Part shown: in pieces, positions 1 through 39,634 of the stretch
How positions within the stretch are numbered: position 1 is the stretch's first letter
How the letters are laid out: each line of letters opens with the position of its first letter
Assembly: GCF_006345805.1 (NCBI RefSeq)
Contig: NW_021835406.1
Span: 1-39,634 of the forward strand
DNA length: 39,634 bases
Direction: 5' to 3'
Origin: Octopus sinensis
Taxonomy: Eukaryota
Program-made: the position numbers and the translations under genes
Notes under the pieces: generated by a model
Told to the model about the DNA's origin: nothing
Databases searched by the model: none
The model's input: the letters and a program-made list of their open reading frames with translations, nothing else

Positions 1-96
1 TATATAAATCGGAGCTGGAGGGGGTGGTTGAAGCCATGTCGGTAGGGGGAGTTCGTAAGAGTTCTTACGTAGGTCGATTATGTTGCATCCAAACAA

Positions 97-5357: not shown

Positions 5358-5909
5358 CCTTTCTACTATAGGCCCAAGCCCTGAAATTTGCAGGGGGTGG
5401 GATAGTCGATTACATCGACCCCAGTGCATATCTGGTACTTAATTTATCGACCTCGAAAGGGTGAAAGGCAAAGTCGAACACGGCAATTTGCCCGGCATTT
5501 TGCCCGGGGTGTAACGATTCTTTTCTAATCTAGGCACAAGGCCCGAAATTTTGGGGGAAGAGGCCAGTCAATTAGATCGACCCCAGTACGCAACTGGTGC
5601 TTAATTTATCGACCTAGAAAAGCAAAGTCGACCTCGGCGGAATTTGAACTTACAACGTAGAGGCAGACGAAATACCCATTTCTTTATTACCCACAAGGAG
5701 CTAAACATAGAGGGGACAAACATGGACAGACATAGGTATTAAGTCGATTACATCGACCCTAGTGTGTAACTGGTACTTAATTTATCGAGCCCAAAAGGAT
5801 GAAAGGCAAAGTCGACCTCGGCGGAATTTGAACTCACAACGTAGCGGCAGACGAAATACCGCTAAGCATTCCAGCCAGCCTGCTAACGACTCTGCCAGCT
5901 CGCCGCCTT
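5358..5909 (-). mobile_element. Family-A SINE dimer (5521-5909) abutting an older deleted monomer (5358-5520)
   Basis: B boxes at 5646 and 5830 (184 bp apart) with the conserved inter-unit linker. Confidence 0.9.
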
Positions 5910-6551
5910 CTAGAGCCCCCATAATTAGGTTCTTAAGCAATCGTATTGTGCCATCTCCAAAAATGCTCGTAGAAAAGAAATATTGAACTGACTCACGGGA
6001 TGTTCGGCTGGGTTTTGCATATACACCTAGAAGACATTCCGGCGATTCGTGTTCGAGTCGAGGTGTTAGATGCTAACCAAAATTCGTTTTTCACCAAGTA
6101 GCCAAAGTCTTTATTTTCCGGGAAACCCATCAGTATTTTATAGGGATATATTTAGAAATATCAGCCAGAAAATTCTAAGATCACACAATGATGTTAGAAA
6201 GACAGGACACACTTGAAAATGGATTCCTAGATATACTGTACCGGAGACAAATACGGGAAAATTTTGGCTCACAGGTCTGTTCGATCAAAGTTGATATGGG
6301 TCTAATTTGAAGAAGAAAATGTATCCACAACCATCAACTAGGGGGCTTCTTTGTGGTTGTCTGGCCTGTTAGAAATAGCAGTTGAATCTTCCTCAAATAA
6401 CACTTTGTCATGAGTGAATAAAAAAGAAGAGTTCCATCGGCTTCGTCATTTATGAGGAAGGATTGTTATGGCTGGACGCATTTGAACGTCGGCCCGCTTA
6501 AACTCGATCCCTACAACAACAACAAACACAACTACAACAACAACAGCGATA

Positions 6552-7892: not shown

Positions 7893-8059
7893 CACACACA
7901 CTTCAAGAAAATCTAACAGGTTTTAGTTGAACATACCAATGTGATCATAGTTGTAGGATTCTGTTGAAGAAGGATCTATTTCGTTTTGGCTAGGTCGTTA
8001 CCCGGCAGCGTAACGACGGATACGACTATATTTCAATAAATTAAACATCAATTAAACAT

Positions 8060-8465
8060 GAGTGACTGTGTGGTAAGTAGCTTGTTTACCAACCACATGG
8101 TTCCGGGTTCAGTCCCACTGCGTGGCATCTTGGGCAAGTGCCTTCTACTATAGCCTCGGGCCGACCAAAGCCTTGTGAGTGGATTTGGTAGACGGAAACT
8201 GAAAGAAGCCCGTCGTATATATGTATATATATGCGTGTGTGTGTTTGTGTGTCTGTGTTTGTCCCCCTAGCATTGCTTGACAACCGATGCTGGTGTGTTT
8301 ATGTCCCCGTTACTTAGCGGTTCGGCAAAAGAGACCGATAGAATAAGTACTGGGCTTACAAAAGAATAAGTCCCGGGGTCGAGTTGCTCGACTAAAGGCG
8401 GTGCTCCAGCATGGCCGCAGTCAAATGACTGAAACAAGTAAAAGAGAAAAAGAGTAAAAGAGAGA
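8060..8465 (+). mobile_element. Near full-length young family-C CORE-SINE
   Basis: tRNA-like head, TCTTGGGCAAGTG CORE motif, internal (TA)/(TG) tract, 3' (TAAAAGAG)-like tandem tail; very high identity to 30524-30919. Confidence 0.9.
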
Positions 8466-8813: not shown

Positions 8814-9484
8814 ATTATTTACTTCTACTTTTCTATGTCCTTTTTCGTCTGAGAAACATTATCTATGTCATGACCATGCCCTGCACAAAAAAGAAAAATA
8901 CAACCCCGAGGAAGCATTATTTGTTGACAATCCGACAGAAAAAAGATTTAATGGGGTAGTCACTTGAGCTTTCTAAGAATTGTTAAAATTTATTCCGTGA
9001 TTCCTATGGCTGAGAATCAGAAAGCATCTTAAAATATACAAGGCTTCTTCCATAGTAAGTAGAATAAAAATCTTCAAAATATGTGTATCTTTCGATGTAA
9101 CAGACTTTCTCGTTTTCATGCCATCTATAAACATCTGTTAAACAAACATACATACATACTTACCTACCTACATACATACATACATACACGTACATATGGT
9201 GTATTTAAGAAAAGAACATTGTCAGTTCATGTTACTGGTAGTTTCAAAATTACACAAAGGCATGTTAAGTTCCTTCTGTATTTATTTTCAATAGATTTAC
9301 TTGACTTGTACACTTGACTCGCTCAAGATATGGACTGCTTTCGGCGCACAAACAGACTCAAGAACCCATGCGATATACACGCGTGCGCGTGCATAGTCAC
9401 AGACACACGCAATCACACACACACACACTCACACAGATGTACGCACACACTCATGCATACACAAACACATACGTATTTCTTTAT

Positions 9485-10054
9485 AACACAGCGGGGACAA
9501 ACAAGGATAGACAAAGAGATTAAGTCGATTACATCGATCCAATACGTAACTGGTACTTACTTAATCGACCCCGAAAGGATGAAAGGCAAAGTCGACCTCG
9601 TCGGAATGTGAAGTCACAATGTAACGGCAGACGAAATACCTATTTCTTTACTACCCACAAGGGGCTAAACACAAAGAGGACAAACTAGAACAGACAAACG
9701 GATTAAGTCAATTATATCGACCCCAGTGCGTAACTGGTACTTATTTAATCGACCCCGAAAGGATGGAAGGCAAAGTCGACCTCGGCGGAATTTGAACTCA
9801 GAACGTAGTGGCAGACGAAATACCTATTACTTTACTACCCACAAGGGGATAAACACAGAGGGGCCAAACAAGGACAGACAAAAGGATTAAGTCGATTATA
9901 TCGACCCCATGCGTAACTGGTACTTAATTTATCGACCCTGAAAGGATGAAAGGCAAAGTCGACCTCGGCGGAATTTGAACTCAGAACGTAACGGCAGACG
10001 AAATACCGCTAAGCATTTCGCCCGGTGTGCTAACAGTTCTGCCAGCTTGCCGCC
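9485..10054 (-). mobile_element. Family-A SINE trimer ending in a partial linker
   Basis: GACGAAATACC at 9630, 9814 and 9997 (periods 184 and 183 bp). Confidence 0.9.
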
Positions 10055-10665
10055 ATACACAAACGCATATAAACACGCATACCTCTGCAGGGAAGGACAA
10101 AGGGAGTGACCGATAGATAGAGAAACAGAGAGAAAGAGTGAGAAAGACCACACACACACACACACAATATATATAATACACACACAAATGAATGAAAAAT
10201 ACGCAATTATAACAACGCTGGTAGGAAATGTTCGCGTCTACAATGAATCTACAGTTGAAGGCTTTTATTATTTTATATTATTGTAATGAAAGTCGTTTTC
10301 TTGTTAATTCAAACCCATCATGTCTAATTATAATGGGATATCTCATGACAAAAATACTTTACTCAAGTCTCAACAGAATCATCGTCAATGAGTTATTCTT
10401 TCGAGAATTGAGGAAAGAAAGCCGGAAAAGAAAAATTGAACATTTTCATGTTAATGACTCGTTTTATTGTACTCTCTACTCCAAGAACATACGATGACTA
10501 AAGCGGGGACAAAGGCTTTGATGCCTCATTAATTTTAGCTTTTTATTTTGAGAATAATATCGCTTGATTCCCAAATCATTTTTGCATCCTAATTTCGACG
10601 AAAAATTTGTCGTTTTAGCTGATACATTCAATAGCTATGGCGTTTGTATTATTTGTACCGATTTG

Positions 10666-11101
10666 AGAGACGGCGAGTTGGCAGAAACGTTAGCACGCCG
10701 GGCGAAATGCTTAGCAATATTTCGTCTGTCTTTGTCTTCTGAGTTCGAATTCCGCTGAGGTTGACTTTGCCATTCATCCTTTTAGGATCGATAATTTAAG
10801 TACCAGTTACGCACTGGGGTCGGTGTGATCGACTTAATCCGTTTGCCTGCCTTTGTTTGTCCTTTCTATGTTTAGCCCCTTGTAGGCAATAAAGAAATAA
10901 GACACTTTAGCACGCCGGACGAAATGCTTAGCAGTATTTCGTCTGTCTTTATGTTCTGAGTTCGAATTCCACCGCGGTCGACTTTGCCTTTCATCCTTTC
11001 GGGGTCGATAAATTAAGTCGCAGTTGCGTACTGGGGTCGACCTAATCGACATCCCCGTCTTCCCTAAAATTTTGGGATTTGTGCCTAGATTAGAAAGGAT
11101 C
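10666..11101 (+). mobile_element. Family-A SINE dimer with a 15-bp TSD
   Basis: B boxes at 10741 and 10958 (217 bp); ATTTGTACCGA(T/A)TTG at 10651-10665 and 11102-11116. Confidence 0.9.
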
Positions 11102-11564: not shown

Positions 11565-12230
11565 TCCTTTTTGCAGGTGTTAAACTGCGGCCATGCTGGG
11601 TCACCGCCTTGTAGGATTTAGTTGAAGAAATTGAACCCGTTGGTTAAGCTTTTGTTTGTTTTTGAAGTTTTGTACTTTTTTTGCAGTAGCTCTTTTGCCA
11701 ATACACTAAGTCATGGAGACGAAAACAAACGAACACCAGTTGTCAAACGGTGGGGTGAGGAGACCAACTGAACATTAAACTCGCGCAAACACACACACGC
11801 ACGCAAAAACACACAACAATTTCCATTCATTGACTTATATTCATTTGATTGCGGTCATACTGGATCACCGCCTTAAACGTATTCTGTCGAAGAAATGAAC
11901 CCCCAGGACTTGTTCTTTTTAAGCCTAGTACCTACTTATTCTATTGGTCTCCTTTGGCGAACCAGGACTTAAACATACCAACAACGACTGTCAAGCGGTG
12001 ATAGGGGGCTGGGTGACAAACACAGGCAAAAAGACACACATACATAGATATATGTATATATGTATATATACGACGGGCTTCTTTCAGTTTCCGTCTACCA
12101 AATCAACTCGCAAGGATTTCTTCGGCTCGAGGCTATGGTAAAAGACATTCGCCCAAGGCGCCACGCAGTAGGATTTAACCTGGAACCTTGTAGTTAAGAA
12201 GCAAGCTTCTTACCGTACTCCGACGTCTGG
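11565..12230 (-). mobile_element. Two diverged family-C SINEs (3' fragment ~11565-11800; near-complete ~11835-12230)
   Basis: Reverse-complement matches to the tail, body and head of 8060-8465. Confidence 0.75.
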
Positions 12231-16869: not shown

Positions 16870-17870
16870 TAAAGGACATGGCCACAAGAACCACTCCAAG
16901 AAGCACCACTATCGCAAACACTAGCAACGTTGGCAGCACCTCCACCACCACTACCACCGACGCCAACAGCTCCACTAGCACCATAACCACCACTGCCACC
17001 ACCAACACCACCGATACCACCGCTACCGCCATCACCAATACTAGAATCACCAACATCCCTAAAGCCATTGCCAAGACCACCACTACCACCACCACCACAA
17101 CTGTCACTACTAGCACCAGCAGCACCAGCAGCACCAGCAGTAGCGCCATTGCAACCACGGCTAGCAACACAATCACAGCTGTTACTATTACCACCACCAC
17201 CCCCACCGCTACCACCACCATTACCACCACCACTACCACCACACACCACTACCACTACCACTACCACCACCACCATCACCACCACCAGCACCAGCACCAC
17301 CACCACCACACCACTAGCACCACCAGCACCACCAGCACCACACCACTATCACCACCACGACCACCCCCACCAGCACCGCTACGACCAGCACCAACACCAC
17401 CACCACCACCACCACTACCACCACCACTACCACCACGACCAGCATCACGAGCAGGATCACCACCACCACCACCACCACCACCTCCACTACCACCACCATG
17501 AATAACAACAACGTTAACACCGCTGCTATCACCATGACGTCACCGGACAACCATCACCACCGCAATACCAACAAGAGCAGTGACCATATCCACCACCTTC
17601 ACAACCACTTGTACCAATCAGCAACAACGACAACAACATCATCCATCACCGCCACTAACACTACAAGGCGACGACCACCAGCACCACAATAACTGTCGTA
17701 ACCTGCGCCACAACCGCAACCACAACCACGGCCGCAACCAGCATCACCACCACTAATAATGAAACGCTAAAACGACCAACAGTACTACAACCGCCTCAAC
17801 CACAATCGCTACCATCACCATCACCACCACCACCAACAATGAAACGATCATAACGATCACCGAGGACATA
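16870..17870. repeat. Degenerate CAC/CAG/AAC trinucleotide tract (~1 kb)
   Basis: Poly-T/P/H on plus and poly-V/G/W on minus; no unique coding content. Confidence 0.9.
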
Positions 17871-17928: not shown

Positions 17929-18504
17929 TTGGGTTGTCCGGAAAGTTTGTGCCGATTTTTAAAGGAAAGAAAAAGGTCAATAAATACTTGCCATTTCATT
18001 TTTAATCAACCAAATATCAACCATTTTGTTGCATAATGCGTCTCCATCTTTCTTTTAACTTGAAAATACCCTCTTCCCAGAATTGAGGTGGTTTCATGGC
18101 AAAGAATTCATCAAGGTTCTTTTTTTTTTATCGTTTATTACCTCATCCAGGAATTGAAATCTTAACATTAAGACTATTCTGCAGAGACCTGAATAAGTGG
18201 AATCCGAAGGGGCAATATCTGGTGAATAAGGAGGGTGGGGTAACACATCCCAGCCGAGCTGCAGCAATTTTTGTCTGGTTCCCAAAGCTTCAAGTGCCGA
18301 AATTGAACTTTCTTATCTTCCATTTTAAAGGGTTACAGAATTAACAAAGTTATAGGAACATAAACCTTCTTCCACGAAAAGATAGTTTAAACTGTGTTCT
18401 AAGTAGAGTTATAGTCAAATCCTATTTTATGGACTCAACCATGTTGTAAAATAAGTCGAAATGTAAGCTACTATAAATCGGCACGAACTTTCCAGACAAC
18501 CCAA
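17929..18504 (-). mobile_element. Internally deleted mariner (DD34D-type) transposon
   Basis: 30-bp TIRs at 17929-17958 and 18475-18504 (28/30), TA on both sides, WDVLPHPPYSPDIAPSD motif, C-terminus LDEFFAMKPPQFWEEGIFKLKERWRRIMQQNG*YLVD* with frameshifts. Confidence 0.93.
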
Positions 18505-19275: not shown

Positions 19276-19376
19276 GTTCTCGGTTGTTCACTGCTGGAAC
19301 AAATAGCGCAAAATTATTTTCTCCGAAGCTCTATTCATTCACCACTATTACTACGACAATAATAATTCTTTCTCTT

Positions 19377-19985
19377 AAGGCTGCGAGCTGGAAGAGACGT
19401 TAGCACGCCTGGCGAAATGCTTAGCTGTTTTTCGTCTGTATTTACGTTCTGAGTTCGAATTCCGCTGAGGTCGAATTTTGCCTTTCGGGATCGATAAATG
19501 AAGTACCAGTTACGCACTGGGGTCGATGTATTCGACTTAATCCGTTTGTCTGTCCTTGTTTGTCCCCTCTGTGTTTAGCCCCTTGTGGGCAATAAAGAAA
19601 TAAGAAACGTTAGCACGCCGGGCGAAATGCTTAGCGTATTCCATCTGCCGTTAAGTCCTGAGTTCGAATTCCGCCGAGGTCGACTTTGCCTTTCATCCTT
19701 TCGGGATCGATAAATTAAGTACCAGTCACGCACTGGGGTAGATGTAATCGACTTAATCCCTTTGTCTATTCTTGTTTGTCCTCTCTGTGTTTAGCCCCTT
19801 GTGCGTAGTAAAGAAATAGGGATTTCAGCTGTTTTACGTTCTGAGTTCAAATTCCGCCGAGGTCGACTTTGCTTTTCATCCTTTCGGGGTCGATAAATTA
19901 AGTACCAGTTGCATACTGACTTCGATATAATCGACTGGCCCACTCATTTAAAAGTTTCAGGTCTTGTGCCAAGAGTAGAAAAGAA
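19377..19985 (+). mobile_element. Family-A SINE trimer containing both junction types
   Basis: B boxes at 19451, 19660 and 19843 (209 bp, i.e. 217 minus an 8-nt deletion; then 183 bp). Confidence 0.9.
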
Positions 19986-20856: not shown

Positions 20857-21006
20857 TAAGTAGCTTGCTTACCAACCACATGGTTCCGGGTTCAGTCCCA
20901 CTGTGTGACACTTTGGGCAAGTATCTTCTACGCTAGCCTCGGGCCGACCAAAGCCTTGTGAGTGGATTTGGTAGACGCAAACTATAAGAAGCTCGTCGTA
21001 TATATG

Positions 21007-21073
<67 letters not shown>

Positions 21074-23072: not shown

Positions 23073-23196
23073 CAAGTACAATTTGTAAGAGGAACAGTAA
23101 GTATATGCAAGATTTTTCTGAAGTTTGATAAACGACATTGTTTTTCTTTATCTACATTGCAACAATGGAACTTTGCATCTTTGTATCTTTGTTAGA
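23073..23196 (+). repeat. 124-bp direct repeat, copy 2
   Basis: About 92% identical by eye to 20722-20846. Confidence 0.9.
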
Positions 23197-23721
23197 TCGA
23201 CCCTAGCACACAAATGGTACTTAATTTATCGATCCTGAAAGCATGAAACGCAAAGTCGACCTCGGCGGAAATTGAACTCAGAATGTAAAGACAGACGAAA
23301 TACTTATTTCTTTACTACCCACAAGGGGCTTAACACAGAAAGGATAAACATGGGCAGAGAAACGGATTGAGTCGATTATATCGACCCCAGTGCGTGAGTG
23401 GTACTTATTTAATCGACCCCGAAAGGATGAAAGGCAAAGTCGACCTCGGCGGAATTTGAACTCAGAATGTAGCGGCAGACGAAATACCTATTTCTTAACT
23501 ACCCACAAGGGGATAAACACAGAGGGGACAAACAAGGACAGACAAACGGATTAAGTCGATTACATCGACCCCAGTGCGTAACTGGTACTTAATTTATTGA
23601 TCCCGAAAGAATGAAAGGCAAAGTCGACCTCGGCGGAATTTGAACTCAGGACTTAACGGCAAACGAAATATCGCTAAGCATTTCGCCCGGCATCCTAACG
23701 TTTCAGCCAGGTCGCGGCCTT
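23197..23721 (-). mobile_element. Family-A SINE trimer lacking the 3' tail
   Basis: (G/A)ACGAAATA at 23294, 23478 and 23662 (184 and 184 bp). Confidence 0.9.
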
Positions 23722-23984
23722 ACAAAAGTTACATATTTACAGAAAAAGGTTTTGCCTGTAAACTGCTGAAAATAACACATAACTTTGAGTATGCATTCTC
23801 ACTCTGAGTGAAATGATAGCAGAATATAACGAAGAGCTTTTCTTAAACAATAACCTGAGAAGGCGCATTTTACACTTTGGTTGCTTGGTAGTGATTTCAC
23901 CAATGTACTACGGGTGTAAAAAAAAAAGTGTCGAAACAATTGTAGCGGTTTTTAATCATTCATTCCATTTTCTATCATTTATAT

Positions 23985-29096: not shown

Positions 29097-29305
29097 CGAG
29101 GGGGTGTTGAAAAGTTCCCGGCTTTACGGGTACGCGAAAAGTCTGGTTGGAGGCCTAACCATCGTAGTTGTTTCACAGGGCTTAGAAAAAACTGAAGGAC
29201 TGCTGCAATAAGCGCGTGAACTTGAGAGGGGGAATATGTTACATAAAATCGTAATTAACCGATCCCTCTTTAACCCAAAGCCAGGAACTTTTCAGCACAC
29301 CCACA
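29097..29305 (+). mobile_element. Mariner-derived MITE (209 bp)
   Basis: 29-bp TIRs at 29097-29125 and 29277-29305 (24/29), TA on both sides, residual QGLEKLKDCCNKRVNLRGEYVT* resembling a mariner transposase C-terminus. Confidence 0.8.
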
Positions 29306-29338
29306 TATGTATATATGTATACATGATTGTATGCATGT

Positions 29339-29393
29339 GCTTACGGCCATATCACGTTGAAAGCACCGGTTCTCGTCCGATCACCGAAGTTAA
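29339..29393 (+). pseudogene. 5S rRNA 5' fragment (nt 1-55)
   Basis: GCTTACGGCCATATCACGTTGAAAGCACCGGTTCTCGTCCGATCACCGAAGTTAA aligns without gaps to the 5' half of metazoan 5S rRNA. Confidence 0.93.
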
Positions 29394-29398
29394 ATGTA

Positions 29399-29830
29399 AA
29401 AGGGCGAGCTGGCAGAATCGTTAGCGCGCCGGACGAAATGCTTAGCGCTATTTCGCCCATCGCTACGTTCTGAGTTCAAATTCCGTCGAGGTCGACTTTG
29501 CCATTCATTCTTTCGGGATCGATAAATTAAGTACCAGTTACGCACTGGGATCGATGTAATCGACTTAATCCCTTTATCTGTCCTTGTTTGTCCCCTCTAT
29601 GTTTAGCCCCTTGTGGGCAATAAAGAAATAGGAATTGTTTGCGCGCCGGACGAAATGCTTAGCGCTAATTCGCCCTTTTCTACGTTCTGAGTTCAAATTC
29701 CGTCGAGGTCGACTTTGCCTTTCATCCTTTTGGGGTTGATAAAATAAGTACCATTTGAGTACTGGGGGTCGATGTAATCGACTGGCCTCTTCTCCTCCAA
29801 ATTTCAGGCCTTGCGCCCATGGAAAAAGAG
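29399..29830 (+). mobile_element. Family-A SINE dimer fused downstream of the 5S fragment
   Basis: B boxes at 29472 and 29689 (217 bp). Confidence 0.9.
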
Positions 29831-30083
29831 GATTGCATGCATGTATATATGGAACAACACATGAAATTGAATGATGACTAATAAGTGGTTCTCGTTGTTG
29901 TACTCGTCGTTATTGTTCTTGTTGGAAACTATGTACGTAACATCTGTGCCAACGAGTGTTTGTCACTTACTGTCGTCGAAAATCACATCCGTGCAAGTCA
30001 CAGATGAGACCGATTCTCTAATGGCTTCCTGCGGTGGCTATACTCTAGAACGACGAAACACTCATCATGGACGTATGTCTTGA

Positions 30084-30500: not shown

Positions 30501-30523
30501 ATATATATATATATATATATATA

Positions 30524-30919
30524 CTCTTTTACTCTTTTACTTGTTTCAGTCGTTTGACTGCGGCCAAGCTGGAGAACCGCCTTTAATCGAGCAACTCGAC
30601 CCCAGGACTTATTCTTTTGTAAGCCCAGTACTTATTCTATCGGTCTCTTTTGCCGAACCGCTAAGTAACGGGGACGTAAACACACCAGCATCGGTTGTCA
30701 AGCAATGCTAGGGGGACAAACACAGACACACAAACATACACGCACACACATATATACGACAGGCTTCTTTCAGTTTCCGCCTACCAAATCCACTCACAAG
30801 GCATTGGTCGGCCCGGGGCTATAGCAGAAGACACTTGCCCAAGGTGCCACGCAGTGGGACTGAACCCGGAACCATGTGGTTGGTTAGCAAGCGACTTACC
30901 ACACATCCACTCCTGCGCC
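30524..30919 (-). mobile_element. Full-length young family-C CORE-SINE
   Basis: Head GGCGCAGGAGTGG on the minus strand; tail (TAAAAGAG)x2; TA repeats on both sides. Confidence 0.92.
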
Positions 30920-39119: not shown

Positions 39120-39505
39120 ATACAATATCCTATTAAATTAGGTGGAAATCAAGTAGTTCGATACAATTATCTGTAAAACTCCAGAAAAGTTAAATTTCTA
39201 GATTAGGTTAGACATTGCTAGTCACCAATCTGCCTTTTCCTAATTATTTGATTATGAAATATGTAAAATCGTCGTCATAAACCCTTGACAAATATATCTG
39301 TAGATCCGATAGACATCAAAATTACTTTTTACATCATCAGCCCTAACAGAAATCTTGCCTGGACAAGAATCTATGTAACACGACTGCTCTTTAACTCTTG
39401 CAAGTCAAGGGCTTTTAACTTCATTAGGCTTTAAACATTCGCTCATATCCTCACAAACACACACATATACGTGAGTGTATGTATAAATGTATATATGTAT
39501 ATACG

Positions 39506-39634
39506 GGCGCAGGAGTGGCTGTGTGGTAAGTAGCTTGCTTACAAACCACATGGTTCCGATTTCAATCCCATTGCGTGGCTCCTTGGGCAAGTGTCTTCTA
39601 CTATAGCCTCGGACCGAATAAAGCCTTGTGAGTG
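39506..39634 (+). mobile_element. Family-C SINE 5' part, running off the window
   Basis: GGCGCAGGAGTGGCTGTGTGGTAAGTAGC head and CCTTGGGCAAGTG CORE. Confidence 0.9.

What the first reader, a model, noticed from the sequence alone, without database searches (positions are those of the whole stretch)
29325..29844. 5S rRNA-SINE chimera inserted as a single retroposition product
Seen: 5S rRNA nt 1-55 starts exactly after GATTGTATGCATGT (29325-38). A 5-7-nt linker joins it to a family-A SINE dimer, which is followed by GATTGCATGCATGT (29831-44; 13/14 identical). One duplication therefore brackets both parts. Known: reverse-transcriptase template switching yields bipartite retrogenes (U6-, U3- and 5S-L1/Alu) in mammals, and 5S-headed SINE3 families exist. 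The fragment stops inside box A and lacks box C, so the 5S promoter is incomplete. Inference: either a one-off template switch by a cephalopod LINE, or a member of an unrecognised 5S-headed SINE subfamily.
Basis: partly seen in the sequence, partly recalled or inferred. Interest (0 to 1): 0.75.

Follow-up and report, generated by a model that had tools for sequence, protein, structure and literature searches.

The report
5S rRNA piece fused to SINE
The first 55 bases of 5S ribosomal RNA are fused head-to-tail to a two-unit SINE and the whole 492-bp block sits between one 14-bp target-site duplication, so it is most likely a single, dead-on-arrival by-product of a reverse transcriptase that switched templates: a real but fairly ordinary kind of event, new only for this type of genome.

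Summary
Window 29339-29393 is 5S rRNA nt 1-55, 55/55 identical to an intact 5S gene found on a marine metagenome scaffold. No other 5S piece is in the window. It is followed by a two-unit SINE (29396-29830). The block is flanked by GATTGTATGCATGT / GATTGCATGCATGT, the only pair of that 14-mer in the window at one mismatch or fewer.

The SINE without the 5S piece has no duplication of its own. Other multi-unit copies of this SINE in the window carry single 16-18-nt duplications, so 14 nt is normal here.

One detail changes. Most of the "linker" is the SINE's own 5' leader, which leaves only 1-2 filler bases.

The element looks young throughout: the 5S part is unmutated, SINE unit 1 keeps 17 of 18 consensus CpGs, and the duplication differs at 1 of 14 bases.

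Best reading (about 0.65): one target-primed reverse transcription event. The LINE enzyme copied the SINE RNA to its 5' end, then jumped into the unpaired loop B of 5S rRNA and ran to nt 1.

The 5S piece lacks most of box A and all of IE and box C, so it cannot drive transcription.

I could not test one-off against a 5S-headed subfamily, because no cephalopod genome was reachable. Verdict: new member of a known kind, modest interest.

The parts
29325..29338 (+). 5' copy of the target-site duplication, GATTGTATGCATGT. It ends on the base before 5S nt 1.
   Evidence: Unique pair in the window at <=1 mismatch. Position-specific control.
29339..29393 (+). 5S rRNA nt 1-55. It holds the 5' strands of helices I and II and the complete helix III/loop C hairpin. 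The break lies in the unpaired 3' side of loop B (UAA|G). It contains only the first bases of box A and has no IE and no box C.
   Evidence: Rfam hit. 55/55 identity to the intact 5S gene on L001. Structure positions read from the Rfam consensus-structure line.
29394..29395 (+). Junction filler, A or AT (1-2 nt). It is assignable neither to 5S nor clearly to the SINE.
   Evidence: 5S has G at nt 56. SINE leaders in other copies begin (T)GTAAGGC or TTAAGGC.
29396..29631 (+). SINE unit 1, full length. It has a 7-nt leader GTAAAAG, then a tRNA-like head GGCGAGCTGGCAGAA... with a box-A-like TGGCAGAATCG (29410-29420) and a box-B-like GTTCAAATTCC (29474-29484), then the core, then an 'A' tail ending AATAAAGAAATAG.
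   Evidence: Collinear matches to more than 10 copies in the window. Alignment and consensus. The box assignments are by eye.
29632..29830 (+). SINE unit 2. It is 5'-truncated at about consensus position 20 (it starts GAATTGTTTGCG) and has a 'B' tail (...CAAATTTCAGGCCTTGCGCCCATGGAAAAAGAG). It shares private head variants with unit 1.
29831..29844 (+). 3' copy of the target-site duplication, GATTGCATGCATGT (13/14 identical to the 5' copy).

Best explanation
This is one target-primed reverse transcription event that produced a bipartite (really tripartite) retro-insertion.

Proposed sequence of steps:
1. A LINE endonuclease/reverse transcriptase nicked the target and primed on the 3' tail of a two-unit SINE RNA.
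2. It copied that RNA to its 5' end, through the 7-nt leader.
3. It added 1-2 extra bases.
4. It switched template into the single-stranded loop B of a 5S rRNA molecule, or onto the 3' end of a 5S 5'-fragment ending at nt 55.
5. It ran off at 5S nt 1.
6. Staggered second-strand cleavage and repair left the 14-bp duplication.

The product is dead on arrival as a 5S-driven element. The 5S piece ends inside box A and lacks IE and box C. The SINE's own A/B boxes would start transcription about 10-15 bp upstream of box A, which is downstream of the 5S piece, so the 5S head would not be copied again.

Shown directly: the anatomy, the single duplication, the exact 5S nt 1 boundary, the near-direct abutment of 5S on the SINE's 5' leader, and the matching youth of all parts.

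Inferred: template switching as the joining step, the identity of the enzyme, and one-off status.
For: - 5S nt 1-55 is identical to an intact 5S gene and starts on the base after the upstream 14-mer.
- The 14-mer pair is unique in the window and lies exactly at both ends of the 492-bp block.
- The SINE taken alone has no flanking repeat: alignment score 7, against 23 when the 5S piece is included.
- Other multi-unit copies of the same SINE are flanked by single duplications of similar length. Element G (10672-11098) has 18 nt with 2 mismatches. Element H (10051-9474) has 16 nt with 1 mismatch. Element B (19383-19983) has about 17 nt with an indel. Composite RNAs or composite cDNAs are therefore routinely inserted as one unit here.
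- The 5S piece abuts the SINE's own conserved 5' leader, as expected if the enzyme reached the end of the SINE RNA before switching.
- No remainder of 5S lies downstream of the SINE, so the SINE did not insert into a 5S gene at this locus.
- Age agreement: 5S has 0/55 changes with all CpGs intact, unit 1 keeps 17/18 consensus CpGs (the best of 21 copies), and the duplication differs at 1/14.
- Literature: LINE reverse transcriptases make 5S/LINE chimeras flanked by 7-15-bp duplications, with the 5S truncated in loops (bioRxiv 10.1101/2025.02.02.635956). Template switching from a SINE RNA to 5S rRNA is the accepted model for 5S+tRNA composite SINE heads (Nishihara 2006, as cited in PMC4758252 and PMC4824008; HaSE3 in PMC3272025).
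Against: - No empty orthologous site could be examined.
- No genome-wide copy count could be made.
- The duplication lies next to TG/TA-rich low-complexity sequence, and a loose flank alignment is not specific there.
- In human 5S/L1 chimeras the 5S part is mostly antisense and breaks at nt 46 or 90. Here it is sense and breaks at nt 55.
- Jumps of this kind usually land on the 3' end of the acceptor RNA, so an internal landing needs either a 5S fragment or microhomology. Neither is shown.
- The partner LINE is not in the window.
Confidence: 0.65

Rival explanations
1. The block is a retro-copy of a propagating source: either a 5S-headed SINE subfamily, or a master locus where this SINE sits inside a real 5S gene at nt 55 and is transcribed from the 5S start site. 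Under this reading the chimera was made once elsewhere, and this is one of several copies.
For: The insertion begins at exactly 5S nt 1, which fits transcription from a 5S start as well as it fits run-off on mature 5S rRNA. Units 1 and 2 share private variants, so the SINE part came from one particular source. The giant squid genome is reported to hold about 24,000 5S-derived loci, 'many likely SINEs' (PMC6962438). 5S+tRNA-SINE composites have become families elsewhere.
Against: The 5S piece lacks IE and box C and keeps only the start of box A, so a retro-copy has no 5S promoter. The SINE's A box lies 71 bp downstream of 5S nt 1, too far for a type-2 promoter to start at nt 1 (established pol III knowledge). 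None of the other 12 or so 5'-complete heads in the window has a 5S piece. In established SINE3 families the part upstream of the promoter boxes is the most diverged (PMC10886601), whereas here it is 55/55 identical to real 5S.
Confidence: 0.15
2. There were two independent events. A 5S-derived fragment and a SINE landed side by side at different times, and the 14-mer similarity is a by-product of local TG/TA-rich sequence.
For: The flanks are microsatellite-like, and loose alignments of the upstream flank score as high in 8% of window segments. A 4-nt ATGT occurs on both sides of the 5S piece (read), which could be taken as a tiny duplication of its own.
Against: The exact 14-mer, including the non-repetitive GATTG, is unique in the window. 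It is the only such pair in kb 29, and low-complexity hits stop at 29324. The SINE alone has no duplication. A 5S piece that is intact at its 5' end, cut at its 3' end and has no tail is the opposite of what independent LINE-mediated retroposition produces, which is 5' truncation (established knowledge). Two events would also have to hit the same base pair.
Confidence: 0.07
3. The event was the same single integration, but the 5S piece was captured at the DNA-repair step. A stray 5S cDNA or RNA fragment was used as filler when the 5' end of the SINE cDNA was joined to the chromosome by end-joining, rather than by the reverse transcriptase jumping templates.
For: It gives the same anatomy and the same single duplication. 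The 1-2 filler bases and the ATGT...ATGT microhomology around the 5S piece are typical of end-joining junctions.
Against: The 5S piece is in sense orientation and ends exactly at nt 1. That is what run-off reverse transcription on 5S RNA gives. Filler capture has no reason to respect orientation or the natural end.
Confidence: 0.08

Closest known systems
Bipartite chimeric retrogenes of mammals (U6/L1, U3/L1, 5S/L1, 5S/Alu; Buzdin et al. 2003, cited; catalogue in bioRxiv 10.1101/2025.02.02.635956)
   Same: A small pol III/abundant RNA forms the 5' part and a retroelement the 3' part. One target-site duplication of 7-15 bp surrounds both. They do not propagate further. The 5S is truncated in a loop.
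   Different: The 3' partner here is a non-poly(A), tRNA-type SINE, presumably mobilised by a non-L1 LINE. The 5S is in sense orientation and broken at nt 55 (loop B), not antisense and broken at nt 46 or 90. The host is an invertebrate, said to be a cephalopod (not verified here).
Composite 5S + tRNA SINE heads (AmnSINE1 / SINE3-type DeuSINEs, Nishihara et al. 2006; HaSE3 of Helicoverpa, PMC3272025)
   Same: A 5S sequence is fused 5' of a tRNA-derived SINE. The proposed origin is a template switch from SINE RNA to 5S rRNA.
   Different: Those are multi-copy families whose 5S part keeps boxes A, IE and C and has taken over promoter function. This copy stops at nt 55, keeps the whole tRNA-like head, and shows no sign of being multi-copy.
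Octopus tRNA-derived CORE-SINEs (OR1/OR2; Ohshima and Okada 1994, cited)
   Same: tRNA-like head with A/B-box-like motifs. The central stretch ...TTTCATCCTTTCGGGGTCGATAAATTAAGTACC resembles the CORE domain as I recall it. The element is very abundant in the window.
   Different: I had no reference sequence, so identity with OR1/OR2 is a lead from memory and not a test. The multi-unit arrangement with two tail types is not something I can match to a described family.

Membership tests
Chimeric (bipartite) retro-insertion made by LINE reverse-transcriptase template switching | Two unrelated RNA-derived parts joined in the same orientation with little or no filler | tested here: met
   5S nt 1-55 (+) is followed after 1-2 nt by the SINE's own 5' leader (+).
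Chimeric (bipartite) retro-insertion made by LINE reverse-transcriptase template switching | A single target-site duplication brackets the whole chimera, and neither part has one of its own | tested here: met
   13/14 duplication at 29325-38 and 29831-44, unique in the window. The SINE alone scores 7, which is background. Sister elements have single 16-18-nt duplications.
Chimeric (bipartite) retro-insertion made by LINE reverse-transcriptase template switching | The 5' part starts at the natural 5' end of the small RNA (run-off) | tested here: met
   Rfam model position 1 and nt 1 of the intact 5S gene both align to 29339, the base after the duplication.
Chimeric (bipartite) retro-insertion made by LINE reverse-transcriptase template switching | The orthologous empty site lacks both parts and holds one copy of the duplicated target | not testable with these tools
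   No eukaryotic genome collection was available. The SINE core is absent from the metagenome, prokaryote-genome and viral collections. The flank ORFs are not on record.
Chimeric (bipartite) retro-insertion made by LINE reverse-transcriptase template switching | The 3' part ends in the tail recognised by the mobilising LINE | tested here: inconclusive
   The tail ...GGCCTTGYGCC(N)AGAAAAG/AGG is shared by 9 or more copies and abuts the duplication. No LINE with this tail is in the window.
5S rRNA-derived SINE (SINE3 type) | The 5S-related head contains the internal pol III promoter (box A, IE, box C; about nt 50-97) | tested here: not met
   5S similarity ends at nt 55. There is only the start of box A, no IE and no box C.
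5S rRNA-derived SINE (SINE3 type) | Multi-copy family with the same head-body junction in different flanks | tested here: inconclusive
   None of the other 12 or so 5'-complete heads in the 39.6-kb window carries 5S. The genome-wide count is not testable. The junction scan of metagenomes found 0 hits, but that collection also lacks the SINE itself.
tRNA-derived SINE (SINE2), possibly the CORE-SINE superfamily | tRNA-related head with box A and box B | tested here: inconclusive
   Box-A-like TGGCAGAATCG and box-B-like GTTCAAATTCC are conserved across copies. However, ARAGORN finds no tRNA and the Rfam tRNA model gives no hit at E<=0.5.
tRNA-derived SINE (SINE2), possibly the CORE-SINE superfamily | Dispersed copies with target-site duplications and a family-specific 3' tail | tested here: met
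   More than 20 units lie on both strands across the window. Duplications flank elements G, H and B. Conserved tails are shown.
tRNA-derived SINE (SINE2), possibly the CORE-SINE superfamily | About 60-bp CORE domain shared with MIR/OR1/OR2 | not tested
   No reference CORE sequence was available. The resemblance is from memory only.

The most novel reading that the evidence does not exclude
The copy is an early member, or the founder, of a young 5S-headed SINE lineage in this genome. It would be transcribed from a source locus where the SINE sits in a live 5S gene, so the birth of a SINE3-like family from a tRNA-SINE would be caught at the stage before the 5S promoter is incorporated. A weaker version: the LINE that drives this SINE jumps to 5S rRNA loop B so often that such chimeras form a recognisable class genome-wide. 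That could also explain the very large numbers of 5S-derived loci reported in another cephalopod.
Probability: 0.12. Interest if true: 0.6.

Novelty: new member of a known kind. Interest (0 to 1): 0.35.

Why it matters
Composite SINE heads made of 5S plus tRNA (AmnSINE1, SINE3, HaSE3) are explained by a reverse transcriptase switching from a SINE RNA to 5S rRNA. What is usually seen is only the successful, long-evolved family. Here the raw product of such a switch is preserved almost unmutated, with intact boundaries: 5S nt 1 at one end, the SINE leader at the junction, and a clean duplication.

It shows that the LINE machinery driving this invertebrate SINE makes the same kind of chimera as mammalian L1. 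It also gives a concrete acceptor site, loop B of 5S.

Together with the multi-unit SINE copies nearby that carry single duplications, it suggests a switch-prone enzyme. That is relevant to how SINE modules get shuffled in molluscs.

By itself it has no likely function, and it is one locus.

Tried and rejected
1. Junction in outside data. A degenerate junction pattern against JGI metagenome contigs found 0 hits. Control scans with the SINE core found 0 hits in metagenome, prokaryote-genome and viral collections. These collections hold no DNA of this kind, so the negative result means nothing.

2. ORF trick. I looked up the ORFs that cross the junction and the downstream flank by exact sequence and found none on record. 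I also searched the junction ORF in the 5.8-billion-protein set. The single candidate was a spurious ORF over a real 5S gene. That gave a useful 5S reference and showed that the set holds no ORFs from this SINE.

3. Literature. The Walker and Doolittle 1983 paper, cited in an Octopus vulgaris genome paper and which might have supplied a cephalopod 5S sequence, is not held. Searching papers for strings of the SINE sequence found nothing. No paper links 5S-Deu-L2 with octopus.

4. SINE inserted into a 5S gene or a 5S-derived SINE at this locus. Rejected, because no 5S sequence follows the SINE.

5. The 14-mer as low-complexity background. A generic flank alignment turned out to be non-specific, so I replaced it with exact-14-mer tests. 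These reject the background explanation at roughly p<=0.02.

6. GGATT at the start of the second 14-mer as part of the SINE tail. Rejected after element G's duplication fixed the tail end at ...AGAAAGG.

7. Other small-RNA pieces at other SINE heads. None found: all sub-threshold Rfam hits are microsatellite artefacts.

8. Organism and gene context. There is no convincing coding ORF in the window and four candidate ORFs have no Pfam hit. The host could not be verified.

Full report
**What is in the sequence**

Rfam finds one family above its gathering score in the whole 39.6-kb window: 5S rRNA at 29339-29426, with 42.7 bits against a threshold of 38. The alignment is forced to be global, and only its 5' part is real.

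A search with the ORF that crosses the junction returned one protein. It is a spurious ORF over a genuine 5S gene on a TARA Oceans scaffold, L001. That scaffold carries two identical full-length 5S genes, each scoring 122 bits, in a 2.4-kb 5S-tRNA tandem unit.

Against that gene, window 29339-29393 is 55/55 identical to nt 1-55, and similarity ends at nt 56. No other 5S segment occurs anywhere in the window.

Read against the Rfam structure line, nt 53-56 (UAAG) form the unpaired 3' side of loop B. The retained piece therefore holds:
- the 5' strands of helices I and II;
- the whole helix III/loop C hairpin.

It lacks helices IV and V. By the standard positions of the 5S internal control region, it also lacks all but the first bases of box A, the intermediate element and box C.

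**The SINE**

blastn of the block against the window finds more than 20 units of the same element on both strands. All other 5'-complete copies start at GGCGAGCTGGCAGAA, preceded by a short conserved leader: GTAAGGC, TTAAGGC, TGAAGGC or TTAAAAGC. In element G the leader is delimited to six bases by its target-site duplication.

In the finding, the nine bases between 5S nt 55 and GGCGAGC read ATGTAAAAG. Of these, (T)GTAAAAG is this leader, and two other copies read TGTAAGGC. The "5-7-nt linker" therefore shrinks to 1-2 filler bases, and the 5S piece abuts the 5' end of the SINE transcript.

Unit 1 (29396-29631) is full length and ends AATAAAGAAATAG. Unit 2 (29632-29830) starts at about consensus position 20 and has a different tail...CAAATTTCAGGCCTTGCGCC-CATGGAAAAAGAG, which at least nine other copies share.

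The two units share several variants that are rare or absent in the other 19 aligned units: GCGCGCC, GGACG, AGCGCTA, TTCGCCC and CCGTCG. They therefore come from one source lineage.

The head has box-A-like and box-B-like motifs, but ARAGORN and the Rfam tRNA model do not recognise it. "tRNA-derived" therefore rests on motif resemblance and on the literature on octopus SINEs.

**Is the duplication real?**

GATTGTATGCATGT (29325-38) and GATTGCATGCATGT (29831-44) are the only matches of that 14-mer at <=1 mismatch on either strand. Dinucleotide shuffles predict 0.09. At two mismatches four more sites appear, none with GATTG.

A loose local alignment of the 38-nt upstream flank scores as high in 8% of all window segments, so that test is worthless here. 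The exact-14-mer test is not:
- Window-wide, the rate of <=1-mismatch 14-mer pairs at 300-700 nt spacing is 4.8e-4 per (position, distance) pair, and almost all of these lie in microsatellites and SINE arrays.
- In kb 29 the finding's pair is the only one.
- Allowing +/-3 nt at each end gives a conservative chance of about 0.02.
- blastn hits of the upstream low-complexity flank all stop at 29324, before the 14-mer.

**Controls from sister elements**
- Dimer G (10672-11098, +) is flanked by ATTATTTGTACCGATTTG / ATCATTTGTACCGAATTG (18 nt, 2 mismatches).
- Trimer H (10051-9474, -) is flanked by TATGCGTTTGTGTATG / TATGTGTTTGTGTATG (16 nt, 1 mismatch).
- Element B (19383-19983, +) has a probable duplication of about 17 nt with an indel.

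A 14-nt duplication is therefore normal for this family, and multi-unit elements insert as single units. Element G also fixes the 3' end of the tail at ...AGAAAGG. That removes my earlier worry that the GGATT in front of the second 14-mer belonged to the SINE.

Taken without the 5S piece, the SINE has no flanking repeat: alignment score 7, against 23 with it.

**Age**

The 5S part has 0/55 differences from a live 5S gene, and all its CpGs are intact. Unit 1 keeps 17 of 18 consensus CpGs, the highest of 21 units, where others keep as few as 3 of 8. Most of its 8% distance from the consensus is the set of variants it shares with unit 2. The duplication differs at 1 of 14 bases. All parts are compatible with one recent event. 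This is supporting evidence, not proof.

**Mechanism**

The simplest account is target-primed reverse transcription:
1. The enzyme primed on the SINE RNA tail and copied the two-unit RNA to its 5' end.
2. It added 1-2 bases.
3. It continued on 5S rRNA from nt 55 to nt 1.
4. The cDNA was joined to the upstream target end.

The anatomy is shown directly. The template switch itself is inferred. The inference rests on three points:
- the same-sense orientation of the two parts;
- the run-off at exactly nt 1;
- the known behaviour of LINE enzymes.

On that last point, human L1 makes 5S/L1 chimeras with 7-15-bp duplications and 5S breakpoints in loops. A switch from SINE RNA to 5S rRNA is also the standard model for 5S+tRNA composite SINE heads.

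The breakpoint in single-stranded loop B fits either annealing of the cDNA end to an exposed stretch or a jump onto the 3' end of a cleaved 5S 5'-fragment. I cannot tell which.

The recurrent, variable junctions between SINE units in the window fall at consensus positions of about 20-27, 58 and 70-83, often with AGAA or GGTATT microhomology between tail and head. They hint that the same enzyme switches templates often. Some of these junctions are shared between loci, so they may instead be inherited from composite masters.

**Can it propagate?**

Probably not. The 5S piece has no usable type-1 promoter. The SINE's box A lies 71 bp downstream of 5S nt 1, too far for a type-2 promoter to initiate at nt 1 (established pol III knowledge). 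Transcripts from this locus should therefore lack the 5S head.

Established SINE3 heads are most diverged upstream of the promoter boxes, whereas this piece is identical to real 5S. None of the other 12 or so 5'-complete heads in the window has a 5S piece. These points favour a one-off.

The alternative is a retro-copy from a source where the SINE sits in a live 5S gene, or a young 5S-headed subfamily. It is not excluded, and the report of about 24,000 5S-derived loci in the giant squid keeps it alive.

**What could not be done**

No eukaryotic genome collection was reachable. The SINE core itself is absent from the metagenome, prokaryote-genome and viral collections and from the protein set. 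The negative junction scan therefore carries no weight.

The empty-site test and the copy count are the decisive tests, and both remain open. The host organism could not be verified: the window has no convincing coding sequence.

**Verdict**

This is a new instance, in an invertebrate non-L1 setting, of a known kind of event: a chimeric retro-insertion by template switching. It has some illustrative value for how 5S+tRNA SINE heads arise, and no likely function of its own.

Noticed in passing
window 5368-5912, 9474-10059, 10664-11098, 19375-19983, 23192-23723, 29396-29830: Most copies of this SINE are multi-unit: one full unit with an 'A' tail, followed by one or two 5'-truncated units. The truncation points recur, at consensus positions of about 20-27, about 58 (GTATTTCG, giving a 184-nt period at two loci) and about 70-83. 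There is short microhomology between tail and head. Arrays G and H are each flanked by one duplication, so the arrays move or arise as units.
   Followed up: partly
window 29100-29302: A 203-bp MITE-like element with 26-nt terminal inverted repeats (29100-29125 / 29277-29302, 88% complementary). It ends 22 nt upstream of the 5' duplication. No second copy is in the window.
   Followed up: partly
window 18097-18312 (-): An open frame containing ...LPHPPYSPDIAPSD..., which I recall as typical of the C-terminal part of mariner-type transposases. Pfam gives no hit at E<=0.01, so this is unconfirmed.
   Followed up: partly
window 8057-8456, 12016-12214, 20857-21053, 30522-30915, 39457-39634: A second, unrelated short repeat family. 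One pair of copies is 95% identical over 233 nt in inverted orientation, 22 kb apart (I1, I7, I13, I14, I18).
   Followed up: no
L001 1-5173 (TARA Oceans scaffold): A 2.4-kb tandem unit holding one 5S rRNA gene and about nine tRNA genes on both strands, from an unidentified marine eukaryote. Its 5S is identical to the window's fragment over nt 1-55.
   Followed up: partly
window 16880-17540: About 650 bp of imperfect (CCA/ACC)n with strong strand asymmetry (GC skew -0.58). It yields long low-complexity ORFs on both strands and shows no evidence of coding.
   Followed up: no
window 29334-29338 and 29394-29397: ATGT occurs on the base just before 5S nt 1 and again just after 5S nt 55, so the 5S piece itself sits between two ATGT tetramers. 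This could be junction microhomology or chance in TG-rich sequence.
   Followed up: no
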